Shown here in pieces: positions 8,273-46,933 of a stretch of 64,000 bases of DNA (the stretch's first letter is position 1; each line of letters opens with the position of its first letter). Under the pieces are notes generated by a model, which saw only the letters and a program-made list of their open reading frames with translations, was not told the DNA's origin and ran no database searches. The translations under genes and the position numbers were made by a program. The stretch lies in the IMG/VR virus record IMGVR_UViG_3300044846_005229, positions 215,340 to 279,339 of that record; one strand, given 5' to 3'.

Positions 8273-8677
8273 TTACCCCGTTACCTTTCTTTCCTTACCC
8301 CGATAATTACCCCTAAGGGCCCTATGAATCCCCTCAAACCATCCTACCTTATGAGGATCCCCACACTTCCACAACGGTAAATGAGATAGCAAATATCGTT
8401 TTTCCTCATTAACCAAACAAGCGATTGCGCTAGGGTCATAACCTTCATAGTCGGGGTCATAGAACTTAACTACCGGTATAGAGTGGTACTCTAATGATAA
8501 GAGTAAATCTATCAGGTGCCATCTCCCCTCAACTGTTAGCCAAACGAAAGAGGGATGCTCGCCCTCAGGAACTCCCCGTAAACGGCAATACTCCAGCTGA
8601 GCATGAGCAGATTGAATAGCTTGCTGATGGGTAGGGAGATCACGCCTAGAAATGGCGTAGAAGTGTTTTGGGCTCAT
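8273..8677 (-). CDS. peptidyl-tRNA hydrolase 2-like protein
   Basis: YAISRRDL...QQAIQSAHA N-terminal motif, F.DPD....SAIA, C-terminal LSHLPLW, typical of phage PTH2-fold proteins. Confidence 0.7.
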   Translation of the reverse strand: MSPKHFYAISRRDLPTHQQAIQSAHAQLEYCRLRGVPEGEHPSFVWLTVEGRWHLIDLLLSLEYHSIPVVKFYDPDYEGYDPSAIACLVNEEKRYLLSHLPLWKCGDPHKVGWFEGIHRALRGNYRGKERKVTG

Positions 8678-8682
8678 ATTTC

Positions 8683-9114
8683 CTAGGTGGGTATACTAAC
8701 GGAATTATCACTCTGGGTTAAGTCCACATCTGATAAATTAAAAAGTTCTTTAAAGAACTCGACTTCACCTGAGAATTCAACTGGTACAGTAGCCAAATTA
8801 GCAAAAATTGCTGCAGCTAAGCGGTGATTACCGTCAGTGAGTATCCAATCCATAGAGTAACCCATAGAGGGGATTCCTACGTCTAAGGAAATTGGATCCT
8901 TAAACCCATTCACAATGAAATAAGCTATTCTTGCTGCGTGGTCATTGGCCGTTGGTTTTCTACCGTTAGCCCTAAGATTACTGATAGGAATCTCTAGCAA
9001 ATTCCCGCAATTGACGGCCTTTTGTACCTTGGACTTTGGGACCTTGACACCCCAAGGATGATATAGGTATGGGTCGCAAAGTTCTTTAAGCTTACTCACC
9101 GGGACATGGATCAT
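8683..9114 (-). CDS. ParB/Sulfiredoxin-like domain protein
   Basis: GFKDPI...LTDGNHRLAAA...TVPV. Confidence 0.7.
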   Translation of the reverse strand: MIHVPVSKLKELCDPYLYHPWGVKVPKSKVQKAVNCGNLLEIPISNLRANGRKPTANDHAARIAYFIVNGFKDPISLDVGIPSMGYSMDWILTDGNHRLAAAIFANLATVPVEFSGEVEFFKELFNLSDVDLTQSDNSVSIPT

Positions 9115-9137
9115 GTGTTTCTGAATACAAATGGCAT

Positions 9138-9845
9138 TTACTTATGGGGCTTCCCACGGAATGACACCTTAGCATCAAACCCCTTCTGTGTCAACCGGTC
9201 CTTGTCTGAAATGTCAACTGGTGGCAAACTGTCGGGGTTATCTCTGAGGGAGGTCAAAAACATAGCAATCTCCTGGTACATTTGTTCAGCAGTGAACAAG
9301 GATGCAAACCCCAGTTCCCCCAAGTTTGGTACCGTTCGATTTAGGGTTATGTGGAATGGTTCCCTAAGGTGCTTGTAGTGGGGGTCTTCCAGAATGAAAA
9401 CAGGAATTTGTAACTTTTTGGATACTTCAACGCAGGCTGAGTTTGGAACTCCAATTAGGTCTTTGATGTCTGGTTCTTTGTACCAATTTCCAGGAGATCT
9501 GCTGTAGACTAGGTCCAGGGAGGGGTGAGCCTCGGTAATTAGTTTATATTTGGGGAGATACACTCCGGGTTCATCAGACACCAGTAGGTACAACTTTCCA
9601 CATACCGAGCACCATTTGTATGCCCAGGGGAATACATCTGGGTTTCTTTTCCAGAATATGCCATCTTTTGGCGACGGTTTAGCTGGTATCCCTCCTTTCA
9701 CCCCAATAGAAAAGCATTTATCACTATACTCGTCCCTACCTTCCACGTCTCTACGAACATAAGTGTTAGCCGGATCCCCACCTTCTTGGCTATACAGGTA
9801 TTCTACATAGTCGTAGTAATCTTTGAACTTTGATAGGATTTTCAT
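9138..9845 (-). CDS. conserved phage hypothetical protein
   Basis: MKILSKFKDYYD...SDKDRLTQKGFDAKVSFR terminal motifs. Confidence 0.8.
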   Translation of the reverse strand: MKILSKFKDYYDYVEYLYSQEGGDPANTYVRRDVEGRDEYSDKCFSIGVKGGIPAKPSPKDGIFWKRNPDVFPWAYKWCSVCGKLYLLVSDEPGVYLPKYKLITEAHPSLDLVYSRSPGNWYKEPDIKDLIGVPNSACVEVSKKLQIPVFILEDPHYKHLREPFHITLNRTVPNLGELGFASLFTAEQMYQEIAMFLTSLRDNPDSLPPVDISDKDRLTQKGFDAKVSFRGKPHK

Positions 9846-10174
9846 TGTTTTTGGGGTGAAAGGTGAATGAGTTTTACTTATCCCGTAAATCAGAACAATT
9901 TTCTATGGGACCTTAAGGGTTTGCAAAATCCTCCGTATGAATAGCCAGTATAGCAAACTTGCCCAAGCTGTCGTAGGTCTGGCTAACCCATTGCATCCCA
10001 GATTGTTCAAACCACCAATCGGAGGGTAATTCACAAAGATCAGCACTAACGCCAAACTCTGTGACCAACCAGCTTTCCCTATCGTATGCCCATGGAACAT
10101 TTGAAAGCTCTGCTTTCCTGGCAATGTAAGTTCGACCGTCAGGCCCCTCAAGAAGTAGGTGCGTCATTTTTCAC

Positions 10175-10555
10175 TCAGTCCCAGTCCCCATCCAAACGTC
10201 TGCTAACCCTCCCCGCAGTTTCAGCAGCGTCTTCAATTTGGTTTCTTAAACTGATTATAATTTTGGCAATGTTCGTGTAAATCGTTACTTCATTATAACT
10301 AAGGTTGTCAAAACCGCATTCGTATTCATCATTCTCTTCAATTCCAGACCCATCAAAAAATTCTCTGAGAACCTTGTGGGTATTCCACTTATCCAGGAAC
10401 TTGTAGTAATCTTTATCCAGGAACTTGTAGTAATCTTCTCCCTTTTGGAAATCACTCCAAGCTAGACCACTGTAGTCTGGGGGACCGCACTCTGATAGGA
10501 TTTTCTTAACTTTCTTCTTTCCGGAAGAGGTCAATAATTTAGGGTCGATTTCCAT
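10175..10555 (-). CDS. hypothetical protein with internal 24-nt tandem duplication
   Basis: DYYKFLDK repeated twice. Confidence 0.7.
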   Translation of the reverse strand: MEIDPKLLTSSGKKKVKKILSECGPPDYSGLAWSDFQKGEDYYKFLDKDYYKFLDKWNTHKVLREFFDGSGIEENDEYECGFDNLSYNEVTIYTNIAKIIISLRNQIEDAAETAGRVSRRLDGDWD

Positions 10556-10579
10556 TTTTCTATTAGTGTTTGGGGTAGC

Positions 10580-10805
10580 AAGGGGACCGAAGCCCCCCGC
10601 AATGAGTCAGAATGCTATCGCTCAAACGGCGACGGCAGTCCTCTCGAATTTGACGATTTTGTTAGCGTCTATGTTGTGCTTATGCAAGCGGCTTTCGGTA
10701 ATTGGCTTGCTGTCGGTCGATTCCAGAGCGGACCCTCGAAAGGGAAATGGATCCGGGGCGATTCGAACGCCCGTGTCGCGCAGTAGTGACAACTACCTAC
10801 ACCCA
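10580..10805 (-). ncRNA. ssrA: circularly permuted (two-piece) tmRNA
   Basis: 3' acceptor/T-arm GGGCGTTCGAATCGCCCCGGATCCA (to 10748) precedes 5' acceptor GGGTCCG (10735); G3:U70 pair; tag frame 10666-10622 reads ANKIVKFERTAVAV*. Confidence 0.92.
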
Positions 10806-11323
10806 GTTTTTAGCCGTATGGTAGGGCTTTAACAATTATTACCCGTTACAGTTAAAAGTCGATGTAATCTCATACTGCCTAAGTAAGTTAAACAACTCAG
10901 TTTGAAGGTCTTCGAAGCCGCCCACAAGTTGATCCTGAGTGACCGCATAGCAAGGACCCACTTTAGAGCCAGCCCAAGGTATGATTTGTTTGTGCTCTAG
11001 AATCTTGTTCCTGTACTTAAGAAGTAGGGAGTTAATCCCGGAGGCTAGCTGAACTTTATCGGATAGAACTATTTGTTTTAACATGGTGGGGGGGGTGTTG
11101 GTTACGGTGAGGGGTGGCAATAAAAGGTGATGTTGCAGGAGGGGTTGGGTCCGGGCATCGCCTGCGGCGCCCGTCCCTGGTCGGGGGCTAACGCCCCCTC
11201 CCGAAATTTTCGGGCCATACCCCTATTGTAGCGCGTTTACTAGGGGAGGCAAGGCGGCTAACCCCCCCACAACCCAGCAAGCTGCCTGGAGTCCACCCAT
11301 TTAACATATATGGCTAGGCAGGT

Positions 11324-13233: not shown

Positions 13234-13719
13234 TTAGTTAAAACTAGGCTCTAGCAATAGTGCCAGCATTTCCTGAATAGTTTTGTAGACGGGGTCTTCA
13301 GGTGAGAAGGAAAACTTTTGAGTTGCTTTATTGTCGATCCATTCGCGGATGCCGGTTCCAAACTCAGTTGACCTTGCATACCAATCACATACCATCTCAG
13401 CAACATAGACTTTCGGCATGTCGTGGATGCTACCCCAGTATTCGGGGTGATGTGGGTTCACGGACTGATGATGTTTGATGACTTCAGAAAGTAAAGGGTC
13501 TGAATGAAAAAGGTGGGCAAACTCTATACCTTTGAATTTAGAATTATCATGGATTTGCCCGTTGGCAATTAGGTTGCGACCAAGCTCAATTTCACCACGC
13601 TTTATTAGTTTGAGCCCCAGCTTATAGCAGCCCCTTTGAACATTCTGAATGTGGTTAAAAACAAGTTCTATTTTGTCGATGGATTCAGTTTCGATTGTCA
13701 TTTGGGGAGTGCCTGGCAT
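13234..13719 (-). CDS. HD-like phosphohydrolase (DUF5662-like)
   Basis: H...V, HDNSKF, HH...NPHHPEYW, EMVCDW. Confidence 0.75.
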   Translation of the reverse strand: MPGTPQMTIETESIDKIELVFNHIQNVQRGCYKLGLKLIKRGEIELGRNLIANGQIHDNSKFKGIEFAHLFHSDPLLSEVIKHHQSVNPHHPEYWGSIHDMPKVYVAEMVCDWYARSTEFGTGIREWIDNKATQKFSFSPEDPVYKTIQEMLALLLEPSFN

Positions 13720-13760: not shown

Positions 13761-14885
13761 CTAGCAATGATAGTGATAGAATTTTTCTATGGTATCACCA
13801 CACAAATAGTTGATTAATTCGTCATCAATCGTGTTTGGTAAAACGCACTCATTTTTCATTACGTGGTCGGCTTCGTCAAATAGTCGGTTTACAATAGAAA
13901 TAAGTTCGCTATAGGTGACCCTACCATACTTAATATCAAGAAGGAACTCTGCGTCACCGACCAATTTTCTATCTACGAATAACTTACCGGCCCGCATCCC
14001 TTCAATAGCCATTTTCATAAGCCTCACGCAATGACTAGCATTCTTACCATCATACCCACAAGCCCGTTCAATTTCAGATCGCTTGACATTTCTATTCGTC
14101 AACCAATCTTGATAGTTGCCCCATCTTTTTAGGTCTGCCCGGTATTGCTGACTGGAATGAAGCAAGGCCATGTATTCATCACTTGCCCTTGTGATTTTTT
14201 GTGTTTCGTCAAAGCATTGCGTTGGCAGAACACTCTGTTTCAGAATACCTTTCCAATCAATCTGGTTGTTAAGTAGCTCATACAGCTCTGTTGAGGGTTG
14301 ATAGTATTCAATTCTATCTTTAATCAACAGATACAAATACTCAATAAACGACTCGATCTGCGACGGTGTTAAGCTCGGTGAAGGAACTCCGTAGTCTTCC
14401 CACTCTGGTTTCCTTGTTGGTGGATCCCGCAGCCATTTACGGTGAGTTTCCATCTTTTTGATTTGAGACTTTGCATACTGGACAAATGTGCCAGAGATTC
14501 TTTTGGAGATTAGTTTTGTTCGATTGTTGATCAGGGACTGCCCAAGGTAATCAAGGTAGATATAGCTATCGGGGGTCTGCCAAAGCATCTCCAGGATGTT
14601 GGGGTTTTGCGACCGTAACAGGCTGAGGTATCGCCTGATGCCATAAACTACTGAGTCGGAATTGTCTAATTCAGGAAATCTTGTCCTAAAAGTTGGTTCC
14701 CCGTCATGCACCCACCCTTTATCCTTTTGCTCAAATGTTTCTAATGTAGTATAAAATCTCCTTGGTGCAACACAGATACCTTTAAAGTCAAGGTCTGACA
14801 TTTCAGTATTTAGGCCATAGGCGTGACTACCTGACTTACAGAATAGAATCATTCCATCTTCAATTTCCTTTCGTGTAATTGTCAT
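13761..14885 (-). CDS. predicted nucleotidyltransferase (Pol-beta superfamily, RlaP/YcgL-like)
   Basis: GSHAYGLNT..SDLDFKG, NPNILEML, GYDGKNASH.VRL. Confidence 0.88.
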   Translation of the reverse strand: MTITRKEIEDGMILFCKSGSHAYGLNTEMSDLDFKGICVAPRRFYTTLETFEQKDKGWVHDGEPTFRTRFPELDNSDSVVYGIRRYLSLLRSQNPNILEMLWQTPDSYIYLDYLGQSLINNRTKLISKRISGTFVQYAKSQIKKMETHRKWLRDPPTRKPEWEDYGVPSPSLTPSQIESFIEYLYLLIKDRIEYYQPSTELYELLNNQIDWKGILKQSVLPTQCFDETQKITRASDEYMALLHSSQQYRADLKRWGNYQDWLTNRNVKRSEIERACGYDGKNASHCVRLMKMAIEGMRAGKLFVDRKLVGDAEFLLDIKYGRVTYSELISIVNRLFDEADHVMKNECVLPNTIDDELINYLCGDTIEKFYHYHC

Positions 14886-16194: not shown

Positions 16195-16803
16195 TTAGTT
16201 TGAACCCAGAACGAACCGAGCGAATCGCTTCACAACGATGTTTTCTCCCACAGTAGCAGCGAAGTTCTTGGTATAAGTTTCGATAGTCATCGTGCCATCT
16301 TTGATATAAGGTTGGTCCATCAGGGACATTTCCTTAAAGCGTTTGGCTACACGACCTACAACAATTCTGCTACGCATTGCTTCTGGCTTTTTGGCAAGGT
16401 CTTCTTTGCCCATTTCGATTCGAGTCTCGTCCAATAGGATAGACTCAGGAATGTCGGATATTGAGACATAGCTTACAGAAGGGCACGCCGCAACTTGCAT
16501 TGCCAAAGTGCGAACGAACTCTTGGAATGGCCCAGATTTTGCCACAAAATCAGTTTCGCAATTCACTTCGATGAGTACACCGATCTTGCCACCTGTATGG
16601 ATATAACTGGATACAGTCCCTTCCAGGGTTGTACGGCCAATCTTTCCATCAGCTAAGACAATACCTTTTTGACGTAGCCAAGTGATTGCCCCGGCTTCGT
16701 CGCCTTGGGAGGCTTCCAGTGCTTCTTTGCAAAGCATCATGCCTGCCCCGGTTTTTTCACGGAGCGCTTTAATTTGTGGAATCGTGGGTTGGGTGTAAGT
16801 CAT
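16195..16803 (-). CDS. tsf: translation elongation factor Ts (short cyanobacterial type)
   Basis: IKALREKTGAGMMLCKEAL, EG.VSSYIHTGGKIGVLIEVNCETDFVA, LMDQPYIKD, GENIVVKRFARF. Confidence 0.96.
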   Translation of the reverse strand: MTYTQPTIPQIKALREKTGAGMMLCKEALEASQGDEAGAITWLRQKGIVLADGKIGRTTLEGTVSSYIHTGGKIGVLIEVNCETDFVAKSGPFQEFVRTLAMQVAACPSVSYVSISDIPESILLDETRIEMGKEDLAKKPEAMRSRIVVGRVAKRFKEMSLMDQPYIKDGTMTIETYTKNFAATVGENIVVKRFARFVLGSN

Positions 16804-25402: not shown

Positions 25403-26625
25403 GTTTGTTTTAGGGGTTACAAGGTTTGTCAGAAAAGGTTTAATGCCATCGCCTGGGCCCAATACAGGATCAGGGTCTAAAGGGCAATTATGACGTTGAG
25501 TTTATTACCAGTGGGGACATCAAAATAAATTTCAAAGTCCGGGGAGTGTTTAGTTGCCATTTCCCCAAAGCTCTTCATAAGTTTGCTTGATGGTGTCTTC
25601 CTTATTAAGTGGGTGATTGTCACTCCATTCGCCAATTTCTTTTGATTGAATAGACATTATCTTTGGGTAGAGGTGCCTTATGTTTTCAATGAAATACACA
25701 ATATCATCTTCAGGCATGTCCTCAAAACCCAATACTAAAACTTCAACTTTGTATGCTTTCATTGTCCCCCGGTTGCTTCGAAACACCCCTGATCGTAACC
25801 TTCGTCGTACATTTCTTGGGCAAATTTTAGAAGTCCATGGAGGAGCTTAGATTTTACGACGAATGACGATGGTTCAATTCTTACTAGGTCACCCATGCCA
25901 TCTATAGCTGACCCCTTTCTGATAAAGTTGAAGTGTTGACTAGCAATCTCAAAAATTTGTTCGTCAGTCATTATCGAAATAGTGTAGGTTGGTTTGGGGG
26001 GGGGGGGGGGGGGTTCCCCATGTAGCTATGGTACTCTAATCGATGGGCCAGGTAAAGGCCGGTTAACCGCCCTACCCGTCAAACTCTGAAAGTTCTTTCT
26101 TAGCGGCTTCCTTCCCAAGCAATCTCCTTTCTTTTTTATGCAAGACCTTTCCATGAGAACAAAGTTTGCATCGTGGGTTTCCGCAATCGAGTGGGTCTTT
26201 GCTATAGACCTTGCCAAAAGTGATGCAATCAGGGTTAATGCCGTTATTCAAACTACCTAGCAATCTTAACCATTTATTCCTCAAACGTTCCGCATGGTGG
26301 CGTCTTCGGGCTGACTTTGCCATTTTGGTTCTAGGGCCCTGGACAATTGATTAAACTACTGGGGCTATGGACGAAGAGGACCAGCTCGTCCTGATCCAAG
26401 TAACCAGCCACCAATAAGACTAAAAAAATGTGCCAAAAAAATGTGTCAGGGAAAGGTCCTGGAATTGCGAAGCCAATGGAGACTAAAAGGGTTGCGACAG
26501 TGAGTAGAATGTAAGGGTTAGGCATTGGGTTTTGTAGAGGGGTGATCCGATGCCATTATAGGGCAAGTTTTCCCTGGGGAAACGGTCGGTTTTCCGAACC
26601 CATGGTTAAAACTCCGAAGCCAAAA

Positions 26626-26707
26626 TACCGAATGTCGGACTCGAACCGACACGCCTTGCGGCAATCGCTTTTGAGGCGGCCATGACTACCAATTCCATCA
26701 ATTCGGC
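26626..26707 (-). tRNA. trnL: tRNA-Leu(CAA)
   Basis: cloverleaf with long variable arm, loop CT-CAA-AA, GTTCGAGTC T-loop. Confidence 0.88.
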
Positions 26708-26835
26708 ATTTGCCCTGAGTAGCCAGCTCAAGGACTTTTTGGATGTTTGAACCGTCGCTCATTTCACCCTCCATTTTGATATGGGAGATGGGCTCCTTTA
26801 AGGAGTTAACTCCCGAGCAAGTTACTGATTGCTCA

Positions 26836-26949: not shown

Positions 26950-26986
26950 ACCGTCTCTTTTTGGCTGGCCCAGAGAAGACGGGCTA

Positions 26987-38692: not shown

Positions 38693-38763
38693 ATCCCCTA
38701 GACAGAATTGAACTGTCGTCTCTCGCTTACAAGGCGAGTGCATCACCACAATGCTTTAGGGGC
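38693..38763 (-). tRNA. trnT: tRNA-Thr(TGT)
   Basis: CTCGC-CT-TGT-AA-GCGAG; G1.A72 mismatch. Confidence 0.85.
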
Positions 38764-38773
38764 AAGCGTTTCC

Positions 38774-38801
38774 ATTATAGCATGGCTTGGCAAAAAGTCA
38801 A
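38774..38801 (-). promoter_or_regulatory. sigma70-type promoter for tRNA-Thr
   Basis: TTGACT-16 nt-TATAAT. Confidence 0.75.
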
Positions 38802-38891
38802 TGCCCCCAAAGTCAGGGTGCCGGTTTTGACACCCCGCGCCTCTAGATTACGGACTGTAAGGGCCAATAAACGGGATGCCCCCCCTCTCTC

Positions 38892-39323
38892 CTACACCAC
38901 AACCAAGTTATCACGAACCCAATCAGATGAGTAAGAATACACCTCATCATCAATACCAATAGCAACATAGTCAGGGTGTGAGACCGTGGTATCGCCTTCC
39001 CTTGTTTTAAGGATTACGGTGACCTCAAGGGGGACGGGGACAAATTTGCACAGGGCACTGCGGCGATACATGCCAGAATTAGGCTCAGTTTCTTCCCAGG
39101 AGCCAGGAAAAATATCAACCTTACACGGGTACGGCTGTGACCCATCGACCGGCATCAGTACATAGTCAATGCCTTCGACGGCAGTTAAATCACCCCTTTC
39201 TCGGGGGAAGACTTCGGTACCGACCGTCGGGCGAATGCGGACCAGGGTTTTTCGTCTTGCAGTCAAGGGTTGCCCGAAAGCTGCGATGACTTCGGTTCCG
39301 GTTGTGAATGTAAGGGTTGTCAT
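38892..39323 (-). CDS. hypothetical protein (two-repeat PGDYG-like)
   Basis: T/E.RGD...DYV...G..Y repeated twice. Confidence 0.6.
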   Translation of the reverse strand: MTTLTFTTGTEVIAAFGQPLTARRKTLVRIRPTVGTEVFPRERGDLTAVEGIDYVLMPVDGSQPYPCKVDIFPGSWEETEPNSGMYRRSALCKFVPVPLEVTVILKTREGDTTVSHPDYVAIGIDDEVYSYSSDWVRDNLVVV

Positions 39324-39545
39324 TTTTGATGTTGGTTTGGGTGGTGGGTTTAGGTTTGGAGCTAGACGGTTAGACCCCCGTAGTTTAGCAGGCCACTAGG
39401 GCAAAGTCAAGGGTGGTTCCAGGTCCGTGAGGGAATTTGGAATGGTAACTCTTCGTCAGATTTCCTGGTATGTCGTCCCTCCTGGCAATGAGATACCGCA
39501 TCAACGCATCACAAATTGTGCTAGGGGGAACCAAACTGGGTACAA

Positions 39546-39962
39546 TCAGTTCCGATTGGTCGGAGCAGTCAGGATTGGTAACCCGCCTTGGTTGGGCGCT
39601 ACGAAATAGGTCTTGTTTCCCTTTTCCGCCCCTTCCTCAATGTGTTGAATCTGCAGGAACGTCAAATACTCAGGGTTATCCTTAAGGCTGGCACCAATAA
39701 TTTTATTGGATTCTGCGATACCTTCAGCTTCTTTGATGCGAACTTCTTTCAGCTTTTCGGCACTATCGAGTTTAGCTTGGGCTTCCAAAACTGCTACTTG
39801 GCGCGTATATTCGGCCTTTTGCAACTCGGCTTTTCCTTCCAGGGACTGCTGCCAGACTCCGTATTGGGGAAGTACAAACATTGCGGTCGCAATGATGGCC
39901 GCCAAAAGGAATGCCAGGATGCCAAAAATGACGCCGCCTGAGTAACTGTCTGAGTGCTTCAT
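39546..39962 (-). CDS. membrane-anchored SPFH/prohibitin C-terminal-like protein
   Basis: TM helix, PQYGVWQQ..EGKAEL, AEGIAESNKIIGASL..NPEYL; start reassigned to MKHSD. Confidence 0.7.
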   Translation of the reverse strand: MKHSDSYSGGVIFGILAFLLAAIIATAMFVLPQYGVWQQSLEGKAELQKAEYTRQVAVLEAQAKLDSAEKLKEVRIKEAEGIAESNKIIGASLKDNPEYLTFLQIQHIEEGAEKGNKTYFVAPNQGGLPILTAPTNRN

Positions 39963-40037
39963 GGTGCGATTGGTTGTTGGTGGTTGGTTGTTTGAGGTAG
40001 TGATTTGGCCTAATCGGGGGGGGAACCCGGTAGGCAA

Positions 40038-40113
40038 AGTTCCAGGCCGGATTCGAACCGGCGAAAATGCGAGTTTTGCAGACTCGTGCCTTAGACCACT
40101 TGGCGACTGGAAC
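40038..40113 (-). tRNA. trnC: tRNA-Cys(GCA)
   Basis: CGAGT-CT-GCA-AA-ACTCG, U73. Confidence 0.93.
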
Positions 40114-40836
40114 ATTCGATTGTATTATAGGGTGCCCAATGGGCGAGTAAACCGATTAGACTCGGATCGTGTTGAAGCCATTCTCAAAACCGTCACCGTA
40201 CCCTTGGCTATAGGCTTTTGTGTCGATTATTCTGCACCACTCCAGGAAGTGTTCGAGAGATAAGTCCCCAGCGGCTACTGTTTCAAAGATCTCAGTGGCT
40301 GTGGGATAGACCACAAACAGTTCGTCAAAGGTTTTCATAGTTGTTGATCTGTAGAATGGTTCTTTTGTTGGAGTCTACGTGCTTTCCTAGCAAACCTTTT
40401 CCAAATTTGTTTGGCGACTTTCGTAGGAAAGTCTCTCATCTCCCTAAGGTATCGGCTCTGATTTCGACTTACTGGTTTTGCCATTTCTCTTCAAGAAAAT
40501 CGGTGTCTTGCTGAGTTATCTTGTGAAGCCTTTCGTAAAATTGTTCTAACTTTTGATCGACCTCTTCTCTGTCTACTGTCATTGGCATGTTCAAGCGGGC
40601 GTCTTCTAATGATGACAAGGCATCACGAACTAAAGTTTTGAGGGACCCTACTTGTTTTCCAAGATGGTGCATCTCGTCTCGCTGCTGTTCTAGGGGGGGG
40701 GGGTCAATGTTTGCCATTGTGTTGGGAATTTGAAGCCGTGGATACTATAGCACCTTACACAGGGTAAGGCAAGCCCCGGAACTGGCCTAGACAGGGAGGC
40801 AAACCACCCTTAACCAATTTGTAGACTCCCATGGTT

Positions 40837-41202
40837 TCAGAGTTGGGAAAGAGTAAGCCCCAAGTAGCAAAATTGATGAAGGAGCTGATCAAAACCGATC
40901 AAAACCCAAAAAGCTTTGTCAGTAGTGGACATTCCAAGCTTTAGGGTGATATTCTGCTTTGACCAATCGATGTGGTAGTGGAGCATACCGTCAATGGCCC
41001 CTAAAACTAGGGCCACACTTGGCAGAAAAGGAAAGGTAACCAGCACTGTTGCCAATGCGTGTTTTATCGAGTGTTGGATTCCAATTGGATGCAAGTAAGT
41101 GCCTTTATGCTTCACTTCGTCTTCCGTTTGTAGACACCAATCTACCGCGAAGTGTTTAATAAGGAGTAATGAAAGCAAGGCTAAGGCTTTTTGAGGGTCC
41201 AT
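40837..41202 (-). CDS. DUF3307 membrane protein
   Basis: KHFAVDWCLQ, HSIKH, HYHIDWSK, IGFDQLLH. Confidence 0.85.
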   Translation of the reverse strand: MDPQKALALLSLLLIKHFAVDWCLQTEDEVKHKGTYLHPIGIQHSIKHALATVLVTFPFLPSVALVLGAIDGMLHYHIDWSKQNITLKLGMSTTDKAFWVLIGFDQLLHQFCYLGLTLSQL

Positions 41203-41250
41203 GGGAACTTGTAAGGCAAGTTTACAACTTGGGTGCGTATCTTAGTGTAA

Positions 41251-41322
41251 TGGGGGATATCGGGCTTGAACCGATGGCGGCCTGTTTGTAGGACAGGTGC
41301 TCTACCACTGAGCTAATCCCCC
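41251..41322 (-). tRNA. trnV: tRNA-Val(TAC)
   Basis: CCTGT-CC-TAC-AA-ACAGG. Confidence 0.88.
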
Positions 41323-41703
41323 AATAAAGACCAACGATGACCACCCCTACTTCAGTCCAAGACAATAAAAACGGAATTTTGTATCACATTGGGGCCGAAA
41401 TACACGGAACCTTCCTCAGTTACACAAAAGTAGTACTTAAGATCCTCCAAGTTAGTAGTCAGCATTTCTTCGAGCGCTTTCCTTTGGGACTCTGAGAAGG
41501 GTTGCTCCACAGAGACAAAAGTTCCAAGAGGGGTGATTGCTTTGATTTTCATGATTGGGTGGGTAGGGTTCAGGGAGCAAGTTGAGGGGGAATTCAACTT
41601 TGTTTTCCATGGGCCAATCATAGCGTTTCTGCGCGGCAGAAACAAGGGAGAGAACCGAACCGGATAGCACGGTAGACCGACCCTCCCTAGAGCAGTGACC
41701 GCC

Positions 41704-42724: not shown

Positions 42725-42796
42725 TGGCGGAAGCTGGATTTGCACCAGCGATCTTCAGGGTATGAGCCTGACGAGATTCTACTTCTCTACTCCGCG
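42725..42796 (-). tRNA. trnM: tRNA-Met(CAT), initiator-like
   Basis: TCAGG-CT-CAT-AC-CCTGA, C1 unpaired. Confidence 0.85.
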
Positions 42797-42824
42797 TTAT
42801 TGTACCGTGTGTTAATTACGGTAA

Positions 42825-42895
42825 TCGGGATGGAAGGTACTGCCCCTTCTATTCTGCTTCCCAAAAGCAGTGTGATACTTTTCTACTACACCCCG
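42825..42895 (-). tRNA. trnP: tRNA-Pro(TGG), atypical T-loop
   Basis: CTGCT-TT-TGG-GA-AGCAG; C1-G72, A73; T-loop GGCAGTA. Confidence 0.8.
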
Positions 42896-42919
42896 ATGTC
42901 TACCTAATGTTACCCTTCC

Positions 42920-42973
42920 GGTTCCATGCCCATGCTTGCAAAACAGGTGCCCCCCCAATTGAGCTATGACCCC
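42920..42973 (-). pseudogene. degenerate tRNA-Ala(TGC), 3' half lost
   Basis: GGGGTCATAGCTCAATTGG...CCTGT-TT-TGC-AA with no T-arm or 3' acceptor strand. Confidence 0.65.
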
Positions 42974-42977
42974 GTGT

Positions 42978-43118
42978 TCATCTAATGCTTTCTAACATAT
43001 AGGTTTTACCCTTGAGTGTGACAGTGAGCGAAGGGTTAGCTATGGCAGCAGCCAGTTGCTTCCTTGCCTTAGGGTCGTTTAATATCCCCTTAATTAACCT
43101 GGTTGGTTCTACTTTCAT
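42978..43118 (-). CDS. 46 aa ORF inside tRNA array
   Basis: own translation MKVEPTRLIKGILNDPKARKQLAAAIANPSLTVTLKGKTYMLESIR*. Confidence 0.45.
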   Translation of the reverse strand: MKVEPTRLIKGILNDPKARKQLAAAIANPSLTVTLKGKTYMLESIR

Positions 43119-43143
43119 TTTATCAGGGTTTGTGTGGCCATCC

Positions 43144-43262
43144 GACTTGAGGGAACTTTAAGATTTGAGTTATGGCCAAAAAGTCATACAAGATGGTTGT
43201 TTTTTCTACCAAAAAGAAAGTTTTTAGATTGCTGAACCATCTTAGTTTTGCTATCGCAAAAC
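43144..43262 (-). ncRNA. CAGCAA hairpin RNA motif, copy 2
   Basis: AAGATGGTT-CAGCAAT...TTTCT-TTTTGGT-AGAAA...AACCATCTT. Confidence 0.65.
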
Positions 43263-43264
43263 AA

Positions 43265-43341
43265 CCGGAAATCGCAGAATCGAACTGCGGACCTCTCGTT
43301 TTTCAGACGAGCGCTCTTCACCAAGACTGAGCTAATTCCCG
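43265..43341 (-). tRNA. trnF: tRNA-Phe(GAA)
   Basis: CTCGT-CT-GAA-AA-ACGAG. Confidence 0.9.
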
Positions 43342-43402
43342 TTTTTTACCCGGGTTTGATCTCCCGGTAGTTATTACCCCCAGACTTTCACCTGAGGGCA
43401 AA

Positions 43403-43474
43403 TTGAACGCACGGGACTCGAACCCGCATCCTCCACCAACCCGGTGGCGCTCTACCACTTGGAGCTAACGTCCA
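43403..43474 (-). tRNA. tRNA-like gene with shrunken anticodon loop (isotype undetermined)
   Basis: intact acceptor, D and T arms; CCACC-GGGTT-GGTGG has only a 5-nt loop. Confidence 0.65.
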
Positions 43475-43609
43475 AATCCCTTTGAATAAACCTGCAAGTT
43501 ACTTTTAAGGGCCGGGTATTACAATTGCAGTTGCTTTCCCCTCGGGACTTTCACCCGTATATGCAACTCTGTTAATTCGTGGTTGCTAACGATTTCCCGT
43601 TTCCGGAAA

Positions 43610-43680
43610 CGGGGTATAGGGGACTCGAACCCCCCTTTGCGAGTAGACAGCCCGCAGCCTTCCCTGACGGCAAATACCCT
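43610..43680 (-). tRNA. trnD: tRNA-Asp(GTC)
   Basis: GCGGG-CT-GTC-TA-CTCGC, G73; A1.C72 mismatch. Confidence 0.8.
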
Positions 43681-43746
43681 ATTTGCCCCTGCCCTGGCTC
43701 ACTTGCTTGTTCCGAAGAACCGCACTAGCAAACCTGCTGGAGGCAA

Positions 43747-43819
43747 CACCCAATGAGGGAGTCGAACCCCCGTATTCTAATTCGTAGCCAGACGCTTTAA
43801 TCCACTAAGCTAATTGGGC
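43747..43819 (-). tRNA. trnR: tRNA-Arg(ACG)
   Basis: TCTGG-CT-ACG-AA-TTAGA. Confidence 0.9.
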
Positions 43820-43874
43820 AGTTTTCTGCCGAAAACTTTCAGAGTGTTCTCGTAAGTTTCTCGTTAGAGAAACA

Positions 43875-43955
43875 TGGCCCCCAAGGGACTTGAACCCTTA
43901 CAGCTTTCGCTGGGAGTTTTTAAGACTCCTGTGTCTACCCTTCCACCAGAAGGCC
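43875..43955 (-). tRNA. trnL: tRNA-Leu(TAA), second divergent copy
   Basis: GGAGT-CT-TAA-AA-ACTCC, long variable arm. Confidence 0.9.
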
Positions 43956-44014
43956 ATTTGGTGTTAAATTTTCAAGTTGCTGGTTGAGAGTTTTGACTCT
44001 GCCAACCTGTCACT

Positions 44015-44058
44015 ATTATAGCGTCTCTGCGGGCAGAGACAAGGGCGGTTAACCGAAC
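44015..44058 (-). promoter_or_regulatory. promoter with upstream CGGTTAACCG palindrome
   Basis: GTTCGGTTAACCGCCC-TTGTCT-16-TATAAT. Confidence 0.7.
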
Positions 44059-44128
44059 GTTTGCTGAGCAAACGACACCGGAGAGATGGCCCCCCGAGAT
44101 TTATCTTAAGTTTCCTCGTCAGAGAAAA

Positions 44129-44200
44129 AGCGGGTAGGGGTAGTCGAAACCCCGTCTACTGCTTGGAAGGCAGTCATATTGGCCGTTATACGATACCCGC
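44129..44200 (-). tRNA. trnG: tRNA-Gly(TCC)
   Basis: ACTGC-CT-TCC-AA-GCAGT, U73. Confidence 0.9.
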
Positions 44201-44240
44201 ATTTTGTATGTTGCTTCGGTAATGTTTACGTCAGCAAAAG

Positions 44241-44313
44241 GGTGATGAACGGGAATCGGACCCGCGCTAGTCTGGCTCACAACCAGATGCCTTACCACTT
44301 GGCTACCACCACC
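44241..44313 (-). tRNA. trnH: tRNA-His(GTG) with encoded G-1
   Basis: TCTGG-TT-GTG-AG-CCAGA; G-1/C73. Confidence 0.9.
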
Positions 44314-44411
44314 ATGGTGCCCTAGGTTTGTATCCAACGGTAATGAAACTTTAAGGTGATGGTCTCCCATTTCCACCCTAAGTCATATTACCCAGACTCA
44401 ACCGTAAGCAA

Positions 44412-44567
44412 TGCCCCAACCAGGGGTTCGAACCTGGAGGCAAAAGAATCTATTTTCAATAAGAAGGTTTGATTTCAAGGCCACACCTTATCAACGTAGG
44501 TTCAATACGCCTATCAGCATTTACTCGTAGATTTGAACCCTGATGCCTGTTCCAACTACTTTGGGAC
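44412..44567 (-). ncRNA. expanded tRNA-like RNA B
   Basis: GTCCCAA/TTGGGGC-A acceptor, CCAGG-TTCGAAC T-arm, interior closed by AGGCA/TGCCT with GGTTCAA/TTGAACC and further hairpins. Confidence 0.6.
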
Positions 44568-44604
44568 TTTTTTCGTGTTTTGAACATTCCTAACAAAGTT
44601 AGGC

Positions 44605-44671
44605 TAGATGATTGTTTTTCCAATTTCGAAGGAGTTGATCGCTGAATCATCTAAGTTTGCAACTGCAAAAC
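44605..44671 (-). ncRNA. CAGCAA hairpin RNA motif, copy 3 (divergent)
   Basis: AGATGATT-CAGCGAT...AATCATCT, compensatory change versus copies 1-2. Confidence 0.55.
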
Positions 44672-44680
44672 AATGGCAAA

Positions 44681-44761
44681 TGCCCACCGGGGGACTCGAA
44701 CCCCCACGCCTTTCGGCACATGGGCCTAAACCATGCGTGACTTCCATTCCACCAGGCAGGC
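44681..44761 (-). tRNA. trnL: tRNA-Leu(TAG)
   Basis: CATGG-TT-TAG-GC-CCATG, long variable arm. Confidence 0.9.
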
Positions 44762-44792
44762 TTTTTTCTAGGGGTTTTTCAAAGAAAAACAT

Positions 44793-44948
44793 TGAAGTGG
44801 AGAGGCTTGAACTCTCAATGTTAAGATTGCGTCTGGCTGCTACTTAACAGGTGGTTTCAACCATGAGCCAGGAAGTTGCTATTAGCATTTACAACCCCAT
44901 CCGTATCGGCTGATTCCACACCCCCGTATACCAGTTCCGGCACACTTC
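44793..44948 (-). ncRNA. expanded tRNA-like RNA C
   Basis: GAAGTG/CACTTC acceptor, type-II D-arm CCG-GAACTGGTATA-CGG, T-arm GAGAG-TTCAAGC-CTCTC, extended anticodon and variable arms. Confidence 0.7.
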
Positions 44949-44967
44949 TTCTTTCCTTAGAAAGAAA

Positions 44968-45048
44968 CTGGAGCGGAAGGACTCGAACCTTCATTGTCTT
45001 TCGACACTCGTTAACAGCGAGTTGCATTTCCAATTATGCTACACCCCA
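44968..45048 (-). tRNA. trnN: tRNA-Asn(GTT) with long variable arm
   Basis: ACTCG-CT-GTT-AA-CGAGT then GTC-GAAA-GAC; G73. Confidence 0.85.
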
Positions 45049-45209
45049 TTACACCCTGCGTTACGGCAGGGGACAGTAGGAAACACTCTGGGGTCGCATT
45101 GCGTCCCGGTGTGAGTACGAATCGTTACTTAAACCGGTTATTACTGACCCTTAGCTGCAAACCGGAAACCTGTGCTAAAGGACTTTTTCCTTTCCCGTTA
45201 GGGAAAGAA

Positions 45210-45283
45210 TGGGAGCGGTCGGGATCGAACCGACGACCTATCGGTTATCAACCGAGTGCTCTAGACCGCTGAGCTACGCTCCC
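45210..45283 (-). tRNA. trnI: tRNA-Ile(GAT)
   Basis: TCGG-TT-GAT-AA-CCGA. Confidence 0.9.
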
Positions 45284-45489
45284 TTGGTGTTAAATTGTCT
45301 AGTTTCTGTCAATGGCGTAACCAGTGGCGTTACTACCAGCGACACCCTTAGTATAGGGTCTTGCCCCGGTAAAGTAAAGGACGGTTTGCCGCCCCCACCT
45401 TACGGACTTTTTCGCGTTTTTCGCTTAGCGAAAGTTGCCTTGCGATTAAACCTTACCAGGGTTAGCTGGTGGGTTAATCTTAGAGCAAA

Positions 45490-45616
45490 TTGACTACCGA
45501 GGACTTGCACCTCGACCCCCTCTGTCCAAAACTACTCGCAGGTACGGAACTTGGCCTTCGTTCTATCTTACTGCTTTCGCCCAAAGGGACATGCTGACTT
45601 CTAACACTCGTAGTCA
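45490..45616 (-). ncRNA. expanded tRNA-like RNA D
   Basis: TGACTAC/GTAGTCA acceptor, D-like arm, TGTCC/GGACA anticodon stem enclosing about 60 nt, T-arm CGAGG-TGCAAGT-CCTCG. Confidence 0.7.
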
Positions 45617-45778
45617 AAGTCCATTTTACGTCAGGGCGGACACACCCCGTTTGCCTTTGGAAAACCAAAGATTTAACCTACCTAGATTTACCCTCTTACA
45701 CGATAACTCGTTTTGATGCAATCTCCCGATCTGCAGAGGCAAAGTAGGCTAGCCCCGTGGATTAATCCCATAGGGCCA

Positions 45779-45852
45779 TACTCTAGAAGGGATTCGAACC
45801 CTCGATTTCCTGCTTGAAAGGCAGGCGACTTAGACCGCTTGTCCACTAGAGC
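45779..45852 (-). tRNA. trnE: tRNA-Glu(TTC)
   Basis: CCTGC-CT-TTC-AA-GCAGG. Confidence 0.92.
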
Positions 45853-45943
45853 CTATGCCGCATTGCTCCGGATACCGGAGTTACGGCTTTTGGCAATTAG
45901 GTTGTCAAGTTGCGTTGCTCGGGGTTGTGTCCCTTACCTCTGT

Positions 45944-45989
45944 ATTATAGGTTGCTGGCCCTGGCAAGTAAAGGGCGGTTAACCGAACC
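45944..45989 (-). promoter_or_regulatory. promoter with upstream CGGTTAACCG palindrome heading tRNA array
   Basis: GGTTCGGTTAACCGCCC-TTTACT-17-TATAAT. Confidence 0.7.
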
Positions 45990-46159
45990 TTGCGCATGGG
46001 GAAAATTTCGGGAGGGGGCGTAAGCCCCCGACCTGGGACGGGCGCCGTAGGCGATTGCCCGGACCCAACACCACCCAGCATCATGGCGCCAAGGGTAATA
46101 CCCACTGATGCCACAACCTTCCAGGTATTATACCCCCCCCTATAATCAGCATTATACTA

Positions 46160-46933
46160 CTAAGCAACAAAATCCCCTAGCTGAATCCTGCCCTCCGGCA
46201 CCCATTCTTTGACAATGGCCCTAATTATGGGCTTATTCGGTCTATACTGGGGGGGAATATCCGACATGTCCAAACTCTCGGGTCCAACCAAAACCCGTTG
46301 ACGCTTAATGTAGGTCCCATGGGTGAATGCCCTAGGGAGTTCTTCCCATGGTTTCCCTATTTGTTTCAGCAAGGTTTTCATTTCTTCGCAAGTTACCCCT
46401 TGAAGGTCCTTATGTGAAAATAAACTCTGGGCATACATTGACACTGAGTTTTTCGTAGCGTCATTGAGCCTCCATAGGAAGTTCTTATAGACGTATTCCA
46501 AATTAGGGACATTCCATACCCTGCAGTCAAATACGGGGTACTGGCCTACCTTTTCAGGGAGATATTCAGGTAAGTTTCCTGTGAAAAATGCCCCCGCTGT
46601 CGAGGCCAGTATTGATGTCAGCTTCTGGTATTTGCCCCTAAATAGAAATTCCCTATTGGAGTAATTCCGCTTGTCAAGATGCCAATACAAAGTTATCTCA
46701 TCGGATTGGCAATACCCTAGTAAAGCCTCACTTTCGGTAACAAGGTGCCTTGTGGTAGCAACCATTAGGTTAACGAATCGCTCATCAAACGGCTTTTGGA
46801 GGTTATGGGTAAACGAACTAAAGGTCCTCCCATCGATGCGGCACATTAAAGGGCGGAAGGGATTTGCAGTCCTGCCTGCCTCTTTTTGCTCTTGTTCTTT
46901 TAGGGTGTCGCCCAGGGTGTCAGTGTGTGGCAT
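46160..46933 (-). CDS. Thg1-like protein (tRNA-His guanylyltransferase / 3'-5' polymerase family)
   Basis: RIDGRTFSSFT..LQKPFD, YCQSDEITL, FRGKYQKLTS, FDCRV, WRLNDA.KNSV. Confidence 0.92.
   Translation of the reverse strand: MPHTDTLGDTLKEQEQKEAGRTANPFRPLMCRIDGRTFSSFTHNLQKPFDERFVNLMVATTRHLVTESEALLGYCQSDEITLYWHLDKRNYSNREFLFRGKYQKLTSILASTAGAFFTGNLPEYLPEKVGQYPVFDCRVWNVPNLEYVYKNFLWRLNDATKNSVSMYAQSLFSHKDLQGVTCEEMKTLLKQIGKPWEELPRAFTHGTYIKRQRVLVGPESLDMSDIPPQYRPNKPIIRAIVKEWVPEGRIQLGDFVA

What the first reader, a model, noticed from the sequence alone, without database searches (positions are those of the whole stretch)
8273..46933. Distributed translation-rescue toolkit
Seen: Pth2-like hydrolase, tmRNA, EF-Ts, a Pol-beta nucleotidyltransferase, 17 tRNAs, a Thg1-like 3'-5' polymerase and several tRNA mimics in one window. 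Established: tmRNA rescues stalled ribosomes, Pth recycles peptidyl-tRNA, TLPs repair tRNA 5' ends, and EF-Ts recharges EF-Tu. Inference: a coordinated counter-defence against host translation shut-off (anticodon nucleases, mRNases, EF-Tu toxins), paralleling the NAD+ rescue genes.
Basis: partly seen in the sequence, partly recalled or inferred. Interest (0 to 1): 0.7.

Follow-up and report, generated by a model that had tools for sequence, protein, structure and literature searches.

The report
Jumbo cyanophage translation-support gene set
A 279-kb lake-water phage of small cyanobacteria carries its own tRNAs, tRNA-end repair enzymes, a ribosome-rescue RNA with a nearby hydrolase-like gene, and a copy of elongation factor Ts; this gene set is a known kind in giant phages, and only the rescue RNA and hydrolase-like gene are consistently linked.

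Summary
Every named item is present. They are 17 tRNAs plus one tRNA-like gene, a two-piece cyanobacterial-type tmRNA, EF-Ts, an RlaP Pol-beta nucleotidyltransferase, a bacterial-type Thg1-like protein, and a protein with the Pth2 fold. The "tRNA mimics" are a truncated tRNA-Ala pseudogene, an atypical tRNA and a conserved cloverleaf with an insertion.

The window is the last 64 kb of a complete 279-kb freshwater jumbo phage. Its tmRNA and EF-Ts derive from picocyanobacteria. Outside the window the genome adds a CCA-adding enzyme, two RNA ligases and a P-loop kinase.

The genes are not one coordinated unit:
- tmRNA and the Pth2-like gene are linked in all 11 relatives.
- EF-Ts is specific to this clade.
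- RlaP is often lost.
- The Thg1-like gene is widespread in tRNA-rich jumbo phages.

The counter-defence reading restates published hypotheses (Iyer et al. 2021; Al-Shayeb et al. 2020) and is untested here. Codon supply explains about half of the tRNAs.

The new lead concerns the Pth2-like family, in which the catalytic Lys is replaced by Gln. In most other jumbo phages it sits beside the genome's only amber-suppressor tRNAs and often beside a tmRNA.

The parts
8273..8677 (-). Pth2-fold protein (134 aa). It is a divergent 'QQ' variant: the GK motif of canonical Pth2 reads QQ (Q18, Q19), while the acidic residue D74 and the Q22/H25/A26 motif are kept.
9138..9845 (-). Conserved neighbour of the Pth2-like gene (235 aa, phrog_4243). 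Function unknown; only weak ATP-grasp-like structural hits.
10582..10844 (-). Two-piece (permuted) tmRNA of picocyanobacterial type. The acceptor piece ends CGGAUCC-A at 10748 and the coding piece starts GGGUCCG at 10735, giving G3.U70 and A73. The tag ORF at 10666-10622 encodes ANKIVKFERTAVAV.
13234..13719 (-). DUF5662 protein, next to RlaP in relatives that keep RlaP; present in 10 of 11 relatives.
13761..14885 (-). RlaP-family Pol-beta nucleotidyltransferase (374 aa).
16195..16803 (-). EF-Ts (202 aa) of cyanobacterial descent. It keeps the TGAGMM and CETDFVA motifs and lacks the C-terminal ~18-residue module.
26625..27067 (-). tRNA-Leu(CAA) and tRNA-Leu(UAA).
38693..41323 (-). Scattered tRNA-Thr(UGU), tRNA-Cys(GCA) and tRNA-Val(UAC).
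42725..45852 (-). Array of 12 tRNAs: Met, Phe, Thr, Asp, Arg, Leu, Gly, His, Leu, Asn, Ile, Glu. None encodes CCA. tRNA-His has an encoded G-1 (44313) and C73.
42825..42895 (-). Atypical tRNA-like gene (UGG-type anticodon loop, non-canonical T loop). Found by Rfam only; identical in a relative.
42929..42973 (-). 5' part of a tRNA-Ala(UGC) gene that has lost its T arm through a 26-nt deletion. The gene is intact in relative G004.
45488..45616 (-). Conserved 129-nt cloverleaf-like RNA with a ~54-nt insertion in the anticodon arm. It is 88% identical to a relative whose proteins are about 65% identical, and three pairs show compensatory changes.
46160..46933 (-). Thg1-like protein of the bacterial TLP type (257 aa).

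Best explanation
The window is part of the accessory arm of a complete 279-kb freshwater jumbo phage that most likely infects picocyanobacteria. It carries several separately acquired modules that keep the phage's translation running. They do not form one coordinated system.

1. tRNA supply. There are 21 tRNAs in the genome and none encodes CCA. About half read A-ending codons that the AT-richer phage uses far more than GC-rich hosts do.
2. tRNA end maturation and repair. This covers a bacterial-type Thg1-like 3'-5' polymerase for 5' ends, a CCA-adding enzyme for 3' ends, and RlaP with two RNA ligases and a P-loop kinase for broken tRNAs.
3. Ribosome rescue. A tmRNA derived from the host lineage is charged by host AlaRS and used with host SmpB. 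It is tightly linked to a Pth2-fold protein that I infer hydrolyses the ester bond of peptidyl- or acyl-tRNA to recycle tRNA.
4. EF-Ts. It was captured once from a picocyanobacterial ancestor and has since diverged. I infer that it speeds the recharging of host EF-Tu.

Shown: presence, family or fold membership, origin, linkage and distribution. Inferred: all activities, and whether the selective benefit is counter-defence or plain maintenance of translation.
For: - Family and fold assignments.
- The genome is complete, with direct terminal repeats, and lacks EF-Tu, SmpB and RtcB, so the phage parts must work with host partners.
- Further repair genes lie outside the window.
- tmRNA keeps G3.U70, A73, a resume Ala codon and a stop. 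Its tag shares the AN[NK]IV.F.R prefix with Synechococcus, Cyanobium and Prochlorococcus tags.
- EF-Ts tree: nine phage copies form one clade (support 100). It is sister (SH-aLRT 86) to picocyanobacteria inside Cyanobacteria (support 99) and sits on a long stem.
- Codon usage: TTA has RSCU 1.03 in the phage against 0.05 in Cyanobium loci, CTA 1.09 against 0.10, and AGA 1.27 against 0.16.
- Linkage and patchiness: tmRNA lies within 0.45-4.5 kb of the Pth2-like gene in 11 of 11 relatives. EF-Ts is present in 9 of 11 and RlaP in 7 of 11. A Thg1 homologue occurs in 3 of 5 relatives and 4 of 5 distant jumbo records, always far from the Pth2-like gene. EF-Ts is absent from the 5 distant records.
- The phage occurs in many lake metagenomes, and RNA-library contigs of relatives cover the tmRNA region.
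Against: - No activity has been measured.
- The Pth2-like protein lacks the canonical catalytic Lys (Gln instead), so it may not be a peptidyl-tRNA hydrolase.
- EF-Ts lacks its C-terminal module, and the predicted complex with a cyanobacterial EF-Tu gave no verdict.
- The host is inferred, not shown, so the codon comparison rests on an assumed GC-rich picocyanobacterium.
- The RNA-library contigs do not prove transcription.
Confidence: 0.6

Rival explanations
1. One reading: the genes form a coordinated counter-defence against host systems that shut translation down, such as anticodon nucleases, mRNases and EF-Tu-targeting toxins. They would be selected together for that purpose.
For: The repair-type members have no obvious role other than mending damaged tRNA: RlaP, RNA ligases, a P-loop kinase, the CCA enzyme and the Thg1-like protein. 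In another phage the Pth2-like gene lies inside an RlaP-PNKP-CCA cluster (L136). The same reading is published for jumbo phages (PMC7824862). NAD+ salvage genes lie next to the module. By established knowledge, T4 Pnkp/Rnl1 counter the PrrC anticodon nuclease.
Against: The members are dispersed and have different distributions, and RlaP and EF-Ts are lost or absent independently. No defence system or target was identified. tRNAs fit codon supply in about half of the cases. There is no experimental evidence.
Confidence: 0.22
2. The tmRNA and the Pth2-like protein do not rescue phage translation. They manipulate the host instead. A phage tmRNA with an altered tag end (VAV instead of VAA) would compete with host tmRNA for SmpB, so that tagged proteins escape or change their proteolytic fate. 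Alternatively it would report the state of the host.
For: All phage tags end in VAV, while host tags end in VAA. The phage has no SmpB. A tRNA-like-domain-only tmRNA in a mycobacteriophage has been proposed to titrate SmpB (PMC4131195). Al-Shayeb et al. mention tmRNA as a sensor of host state.
Against: The full coding piece, resume codon and stop are conserved across relatives, which argues for real tagging. Nothing is known about how cyanobacterial proteases treat a VAV end.
Confidence: 0.12
3. The genes are mostly neutral passengers, meaning host-derived or horizontally moving accessory genes in a flexible genome arm with little effect on fitness.
For: The tRNA array is decaying in part: a truncated tRNA-Ala, and an array content that differs from a 90-95% identical relative. 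RlaP and UvrD are variably present.
Against: EF-Ts, tmRNA and the Pth2-like gene are conserved with intact motifs across relatives whose proteins are only 50-65% identical. The Pth2-like family has near-invariant residues across 150 cluster representatives.
Confidence: 0.06

Closest known systems
RNA-repair and ribosome-rescue complement of jumbo phages (Iyer, Anantharaman, Krishnan, Burroughs, Aravind 2021, Viruses 13:63; PMC7824862)
   Same: The same cast is present: tRNA arrays, RlaP with RNA ligases, CCA-adding enzyme, Thg1, PTH2 and neighbouring NAD+ salvage genes. The counter-defence interpretation is also the same.
   Different: Here the PTH2 relative is a divergent Gln-for-Lys variant that Pfam does not recognise. 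A tmRNA and an EF-Ts are added. The host lineage is picocyanobacterial.
Translation genes of huge phages (Al-Shayeb et al. 2020, Nature 578:425; PMC7162821)
   Same: They report EF-Ts, EF-Tu, tmRNA, SmpB, tRNAs and the CCA enzyme in phages over 200 kb, and propose that these maintain translation efficiency.
   Different: This phage has EF-Ts without EF-Tu and tmRNA without SmpB. The origin of both from the host lineage is shown here.
Mycobacteriophage cluster C (Bxz1-like) and Bacillus phage G tmRNAs (Hudson, Lau, Williams 2014; PMC4131195)
   Same: A phage-borne ssrA gene lies beside many tRNAs.
   Different: Those listed are not stated to be two-piece. The gene here is a permuted two-piece type like that of its presumed host clade, with a tag ending in VAV.
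Archaeal/eukaryotic peptidyl-tRNA hydrolase 2 (PF01981; structures 3erj, 1wn2, 2zv3, 1q7s, 1xty, 1rlk)
   Same: The fold is the same (TM 0.55-0.70). The AQxxHA motif and the acidic residue of the DxG motif are conserved.
   Different: The GK motif with the Lys reported as catalytic (my recollection of Fromant et al. 2005) reads QQ. The DAGxT motif reads [ED]PDx. The protein itself gets no Pfam hit.
T4 Pnkp/Rnl1 tRNA healing and sealing against the PrrC anticodon nuclease (established knowledge)
   Same: The phage carries an RNA ligase and a kinase that could mend cleaved tRNAs.
   Different: The enzymes are of different families (Rnl2-type PF09414 ligases, RlaP, a Thg1-like protein), and no cognate nuclease is known.

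Membership tests
PTH2 (PF01981) peptidyl-tRNA hydrolase | Pth2 alpha/beta fold | tested here: met
   AlphaFold model with pLDDT 87. The top 15 Foldseek PDB hits all have the Pth2 fold (14 Pth2 chains, one DUF2000-type protein, 2gax), E down to 1.5e-5, TM 0.55-0.70.
PTH2 (PF01981) peptidyl-tRNA hydrolase | Significant match to the family profile | tested here: inconclusive
   The window protein has no Pfam hit. Its family profile hits Pth2 chains only at E 0.11-0.35. However, 74 of 121 relatives and the L028 homologue do hit PF01981.
PTH2 (PF01981) peptidyl-tRNA hydrolase | Catalytic Lys of the GK motif | tested here: not met
   The position aligned to GK reads QQ. Q18 and Q19 are invariant in the close family and present in about 70-77% of 150 representatives.
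PTH2 (PF01981) peptidyl-tRNA hydrolase | Catalytic Asp of the DxG motif, and the AQxxHA motif | tested here: met
   D74 is D or E in 98% of representatives. Q22, H25 and A26 are nearly invariant.
PTH2 (PF01981) peptidyl-tRNA hydrolase | Hydrolysis of peptidyl-tRNA | not testable with these tools
   Needs an enzyme assay.
Two-piece (permuted) tmRNA | Covariance-model match above the curated threshold | tested here: met
   cyano_tmRNA 72.8 bits against 70; tmRNA_permuted 56.1 against 47.
Two-piece (permuted) tmRNA | tRNA-Ala-like domain with G3.U70 and A73; a tag frame starting at an Ala codon and ending at a stop | tested here: met
   Read from the sequence. ARAGORN calls the same tag in relatives.
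Two-piece (permuted) tmRNA | SmpB partner, and processing into two RNAs | not tested
   There is no SmpB in the phage genome, so host SmpB is presumed. RNA-library contigs cover the gene but show no ends.
EF-Ts (PF00889) | Profile match with the N-terminal TGAGMM motif and the core TDFV motif | tested here: met
   PF00889 at 2e-28. Both motifs are present in all nine phage copies.
EF-Ts (PF00889) | C-terminal module present in cyanobacterial EF-Ts | tested here: not met
   All phage copies end about 18 residues before the host proteins do.
EF-Ts (PF00889) | Binding to EF-Tu | tested here: inconclusive
   The complex prediction gave no verdict.
Thg1-like protein (bacterial TLP) | Thg1 palm domain with the RIDG and SDE carboxylate motifs; closer to bacterial TLP than to eukaryotic Thg1 | tested here: met
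   PF04446 at 2e-27. The best solved relative is the Bacillus thuringiensis TLP 4kgk at 4e-24, against 1e-7 for eukaryotic Thg1. Both motifs align.
RlaP nucleotidyltransferase | RlaP profile match, and co-occurrence with an RNA ligase | tested here: met
   PF10127 at 2e-17 and phrog_388 at 1e-47. Two PF09414 ligases are in the genome but are not adjacent.
One coordinated counter-defence system | Members adjacent or co-inherited across relatives | tested here: not met
   Only tmRNA and the Pth2-like gene are always linked. EF-Ts, RlaP and Thg1 each have their own distribution.
One coordinated counter-defence system | Protection against a translation-targeting defence | not testable with these tools
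   Needs infection assays.

The most novel reading that the evidence does not exclude
The Gln-for-Lys Pth2-like proteins may be a distinct phage family acting as a dedicated partner of RNAs that enter the ribosomal A site without a sense codon, namely amber-suppressor tRNAs and tmRNA.

The supporting pattern is as follows.
- In 15 of 18 distinct non-cyanophage loci (GC 30-62%, proteins 29-46% identical), the gene lies within 2.7 kb of a stop-codon suppressor tRNA.
- In two fully scanned genomes of about 350 kb, the only two tRNA(CUA) genes sit beside it, while 42-49 other tRNAs lie in arrays at least 6.9 kb away.
- In all 11 cyanophage relatives it lies beside the tmRNA.

The enzyme could clear the acyl- or peptidyl-tRNA species that suppression and trans-translation create, or it could control the charging state of the suppressor.
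Probability: 0.35. Interest if true: 0.65.

Novelty: new member of a known kind. Interest (0 to 1): 0.45.

Why it matters
As a gene set it adds a freshwater cyanophage lineage to the known picture that giant phages bring parts of the translation apparatus and tRNA-repair enzymes with them. It gives clean examples of a host-derived EF-Ts and a two-piece tmRNA evolving inside a phage.

The part that could matter more is the conserved physical link between a divergent Pth2-fold protein, suppressor tRNAs and tmRNA across unrelated jumbo phages. It points to an unstudied enzyme that handles unusual tRNA species. It also offers a handle on why phages with the standard genetic code keep amber-suppressor tRNAs, a question that the XacN1 and Atu_ph07 genome papers left open.

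Tried and rejected
- Complex prediction: phage EF-Ts with Synechococcus elongatus EF-Tu scored 0.27, under the mark of 0.34. This is no verdict and no evidence either way.
- Near-identity search of the phage collection with 12 kb of the window found nothing.
- Alternative genetic code in the suppressor-tRNA phages: reading TAG through raised ORF coverage no more than reading TGA or TAA through, so there is no sign of recoding. All work used code 11.
- DUF5662 against the HD-like neighbour (c2) of distant Pth2-like genes: no similarity by BLASTP.
- Neighbours c2 and c4 of the distant loci: no Pfam family.
- orf9138: the structure gave only weak ATP-grasp-like hits (E about 0.1), so it is left unassigned.
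- Relaxed ARAGORN settings produced mostly noise. Only candidates that are conserved in relatives were kept.
- tRNA(CUA) identity: the acceptor stems are diverse and lack G3.U70, so they are not Ala-type like tmRNA.
- XacN1 and RsoM2USA homologues have no tRNA or tmRNA within 5 kb, so the linkage is not universal.
- A tRNA-His-specific role for the Thg1-like protein is unlikely. G-1 is encoded here, and no tRNA-His was found in the 20-kb tRNA arrays fetched from two relatives that keep the enzyme.

Full report
**What the window is.** The window is the last 64 kb of a single-contig virus record of 279,339 bp (GC 46.5%). The record has direct terminal repeats and is rated complete. All genes in the window lie on the minus strand. 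Near-identical DNA occurs in many lake-water metagenomes from 2016 to 2024. Nothing close is in the cultured-phage collection. Flanking genes are typical accessory genes of a large phage. They include NAMPT, PRPP synthetase and NadA (NAD+ synthesis), an SLH-domain protein, glutathionylspermidine synthase, collagen-repeat proteins and a DNA ligase.

**Check of the observation.**
- ARAGORN finds 17 tRNAs. Rfam confirms 16 of them and adds a tRNA-like hit at 42825-42895. Four more tRNAs lie elsewhere in the genome.
- A tmRNA at 10582-10844 passes the curated thresholds of both the cyanobacterial and the permuted tmRNA models.
- EF-Ts, RlaP and the Thg1-like protein have clear Pfam hits.
- The 'Pth2-like hydrolase' has no Pfam or PHROG hit, but the call is right at fold level. 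A profile of 28 homologues weakly hits two Pth2 structures. The AlphaFold model (pLDDT 87) matches only Pth2-fold chains among its 15 best PDB hits. A homologue 29% identical to it hits PF01981 at 2.6e-9. Of 121 representatives found with the family profile, 74 hit PF01981.

**The tRNA 'mimics'.**
- One is the 5' part of a tRNA-Ala(UGC) gene that lost its T arm through a 26-nt deletion. A close relative has the gene intact.
- One is an atypical tRNA with an odd T loop.
- One is a 129-nt cloverleaf with a ~54-nt insertion in the anticodon arm. It is 88% identical to a relative whose proteins are only about 65% identical, and three pairs show compensatory changes.

**Host lineage and origin of the parts.** The tmRNA is of the two-piece type that Rfam models for cyanobacteria. 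Its tag, ANKIVKFERTAVAV, shares its first part with the tags I recovered from Synechococcus, Cyanobium and Prochlorococcus genomes (ANNIVRFSRQAAPVAA and ANNIVSFSRQTAPVAA). It ends in VAV instead of VAA in every phage copy. G3.U70 and A73, the alanine identity elements, are intact.

The best genomic matches of EF-Ts are all cyanobacterial, at 52-59% identity. In a maximum-likelihood tree the nine phage copies form one clade on a long stem. That clade is sister to the picocyanobacteria inside Cyanobacteria. This indicates one old capture followed by fast divergence. The phage copies keep the TGAGMM and TDFV motifs but all lack the C-terminal ~18 residues of the host proteins. The genome has no EF-Tu and no SmpB, so both parts must work with host partners.

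**The rest of the tool set.**
- Outside the window the genome encodes a CCA-adding-type nucleotidyltransferase, two Rnl2-type RNA ligases and a P-loop kinase. The kinase lies next to the CCA enzyme and three tRNAs. There is no RtcB.
- None of the 21 tRNA genes encodes CCA, which gives the CCA enzyme an obvious task.
- The Thg1-like protein is far closer to the Bacillus thuringiensis TLP (4e-24) than to eukaryotic Thg1 (1e-7), and it keeps the carboxylate motifs.
- tRNA-His has its G-1 encoded. No tRNA-His was found in the fetched arrays of two relatives that keep the enzyme. General 5'-end repair is therefore more likely than G-1 addition.
- Three phage tRNAs have a mismatch or weak pair at positions 1:72 or 2:71. 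This is noted but not interpreted further.

**Is it one coordinated system?** I fetched 31 IMG/VR loci that encode relatives of the Pth2-like protein. Eleven distinct loci belong to the same cyanophage lineage and share gene order with the window.
- The tmRNA lies 0.45-4.5 kb from the Pth2-like gene in all eleven.
- EF-Ts is present in nine, RlaP in seven and DUF5662 in ten. UvrD is present in five of the listed loci (L001-L004, L009).
- The Thg1-like gene is found in three of five relatives' records; the two without it are fragments. It is also found in four of five distant jumbo-phage records, always far from the Pth2-like gene.
- The Thg1-like gene occurs in 161 phage records of many hosts.
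- EF-Ts is absent from the five distant records. It is nearly absent from the phage collection apart from entries that look like bacterial DNA.

The members therefore have separate histories. Only tmRNA and the Pth2-like gene behave as a unit.

**Counter-defence or maintenance?** The counter-defence idea is already in print. It covers exactly this cast: tRNAs, RlaP with ligases, the CCA enzyme, Thg1, PTH2 and NAD+ salvage (Iyer et al. 2021). EF-Ts, tmRNA and SmpB in huge phages were reported by Al-Shayeb et al. 2020, who proposed maintenance of translation. Nothing in the sequence discriminates between the two readings.

One simple alternative does fit part of the data. The U34 tRNAs of the phage read A-ending codons that the phage uses 2 to 20 times more than Cyanobium or Synechococcus loci do. 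This rests on the assumed host. The G34 tRNAs show no such bias. The repair enzymes are the best candidates for counter-defence, by analogy with T4 Pnkp/Rnl1 (established knowledge). The tRNAs and EF-Ts need no such explanation.

**The Pth2-like family: the new lead.** The family is large, with 1205 clusters at E up to 1e-3. It has a sharp signature. R11, D13, Q22, H25, A26, an acidic residue at 74, D76, T/S83, A84 and R94 are nearly invariant. The GK motif of canonical Pth2 reads QQ in about three quarters of the members. By my recollection of Fromant et al. 2005, that Lys is catalytic in Sulfolobus Pth2, so the chemistry or the substrate may differ.

Genomic context is striking.
- Outside the cyanophage lineage there are 18 distinct loci, with GC from 30 to 62% and proteins 29-46% identical to the window's. 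In 15 of them a stop-codon suppressor tRNA lies within 2.7 kb (14 CUA, one UCA), usually as the nearest tRNA. Five also have a permuted tmRNA within 3.8 kb.
- The cultured Acinetobacter phage ME3 shows the same pattern. An annotated tRNA with anticodon CTA lies 450 nt upstream of ME3_195, and a CCA enzyme lies 2.3 kb upstream.
- As a control I scanned two whole genomes. In G009 (368 kb, 44 tRNAs) the only two tRNA(CUA) genes bracket the Pth2-like gene, and the other 42 tRNAs sit in arrays at least 6.9 kb away. In G007 (350 kb, 51 tRNAs) the only two tRNA(CUA) genes and the tmRNA lie within 1.7 kb of it, and the other 49 tRNAs are at least 7 kb away.
- In one more phage the gene lies in an RlaP, PNKP, tRNA(CUA), CCA-enzyme cluster.
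- Three loci lack the linkage, among them XacN1 and RsoM2USA.
- There is no sign of stop-codon recoding in these loci.

From memory, there is also a physiological link between tmRNA and Pth in E. coli: tmRNA overproduction rescues a pth(ts) strain (Singh and Varshney 2004). This makes a functional tmRNA-Pth pairing plausible. I did not find the suppressor-tRNA linkage described in the papers I read. That is not proof that it is unpublished.

**Expression.** Contigs from three freshwater metatranscriptome libraries, 90-99% identical to the window, lie on several features: the tmRNA region (10498-11109), the two ORFs next to the Pth2-like gene, the 3' part of UvrD, and DUF5662. These show presence in RNA libraries only. 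DNA carry-over is not excluded and no ends are resolved.

**Verdict.** The theme is real and known, the coordination is not supported, and the counter-defence purpose is untested. The set is a new member of a known kind. The side result on the Gln-variant Pth2-like family and its link to suppressor tRNAs and tmRNA deserves follow-up.

Noticed in passing
L014-L026, L031, L040, L132, L136; G009 124199-126682; G007 257339-259676: In jumbo phages of other hosts the Pth2-like gene lies beside the genome's only amber-suppressor tRNA genes, apart from the main tRNA arrays, and often beside a permuted tmRNA.
   Followed up: yes
L015, L016, L017, L019, L021, L023, L025/L026 about 10.3-11.6 kb: Two conserved genes without a Pfam family follow the Pth2-like gene in distant phages. 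One is a ~190-aa Cys-rich protein. The other is a ~180-aa protein with HD-like His/Asp motifs. One family representative carries a fused HD domain.
   Followed up: partly
window 10622-10666 and relatives: All phage tmRNA tags end in VAV, whereas the picocyanobacterial tags recovered here end in VAA. The tag is also two residues shorter.
   Followed up: partly
window 45488-45616: A 129-nt cloverleaf-like RNA with a long insertion in the anticodon arm follows tRNA-Glu. It is much better conserved than its surroundings and matches no Rfam family.
   Followed up: partly
window 11150-11210 and 46001-46069; genome 102763-102821: A GC-rich ~60-nt element made of two hairpins is present in both orientations. 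Many metagenome contigs break or join there.
   Followed up: partly
window 1251-3730 and 50474-51391: NAD+ genes are present: NAMPT, PRPP synthetase and quinolinate synthase NadA. NAMPT also lies 5-7 kb from the Pth2-like gene in several distant phages.
   Followed up: partly
window 28628-30709: A glutathionylspermidine synthase (PF03738, 1e-128) sits next to a DUF1190 protein.
   Followed up: no
window 20000-24600 and 56000-60500: Two stretches have clearly higher GC (54-57%) than the rest (46%). The first holds ORFs without families and the second holds collagen-repeat proteins.
   Followed up: no
window 42300-46200 compared with L126: The tRNA array differs from that of a 90-95% identical relative. 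The relative has Tyr, Ala, Trp, Gln, Ser and other tRNAs that the window lacks, so tRNA content turns over quickly.
   Followed up: partly
window 17631-18596: A radical SAM protein is conserved next to EF-Ts in relatives. Its function was not examined.
   Followed up: no
genome 179217-187376: A second tRNA-related cluster lies outside the window: a CCA-adding-type enzyme, a P-loop kinase, and tRNA-Ser, tRNA-Ile(UAU, 90 nt) and tRNA-Arg(UCU).
   Followed up: partly
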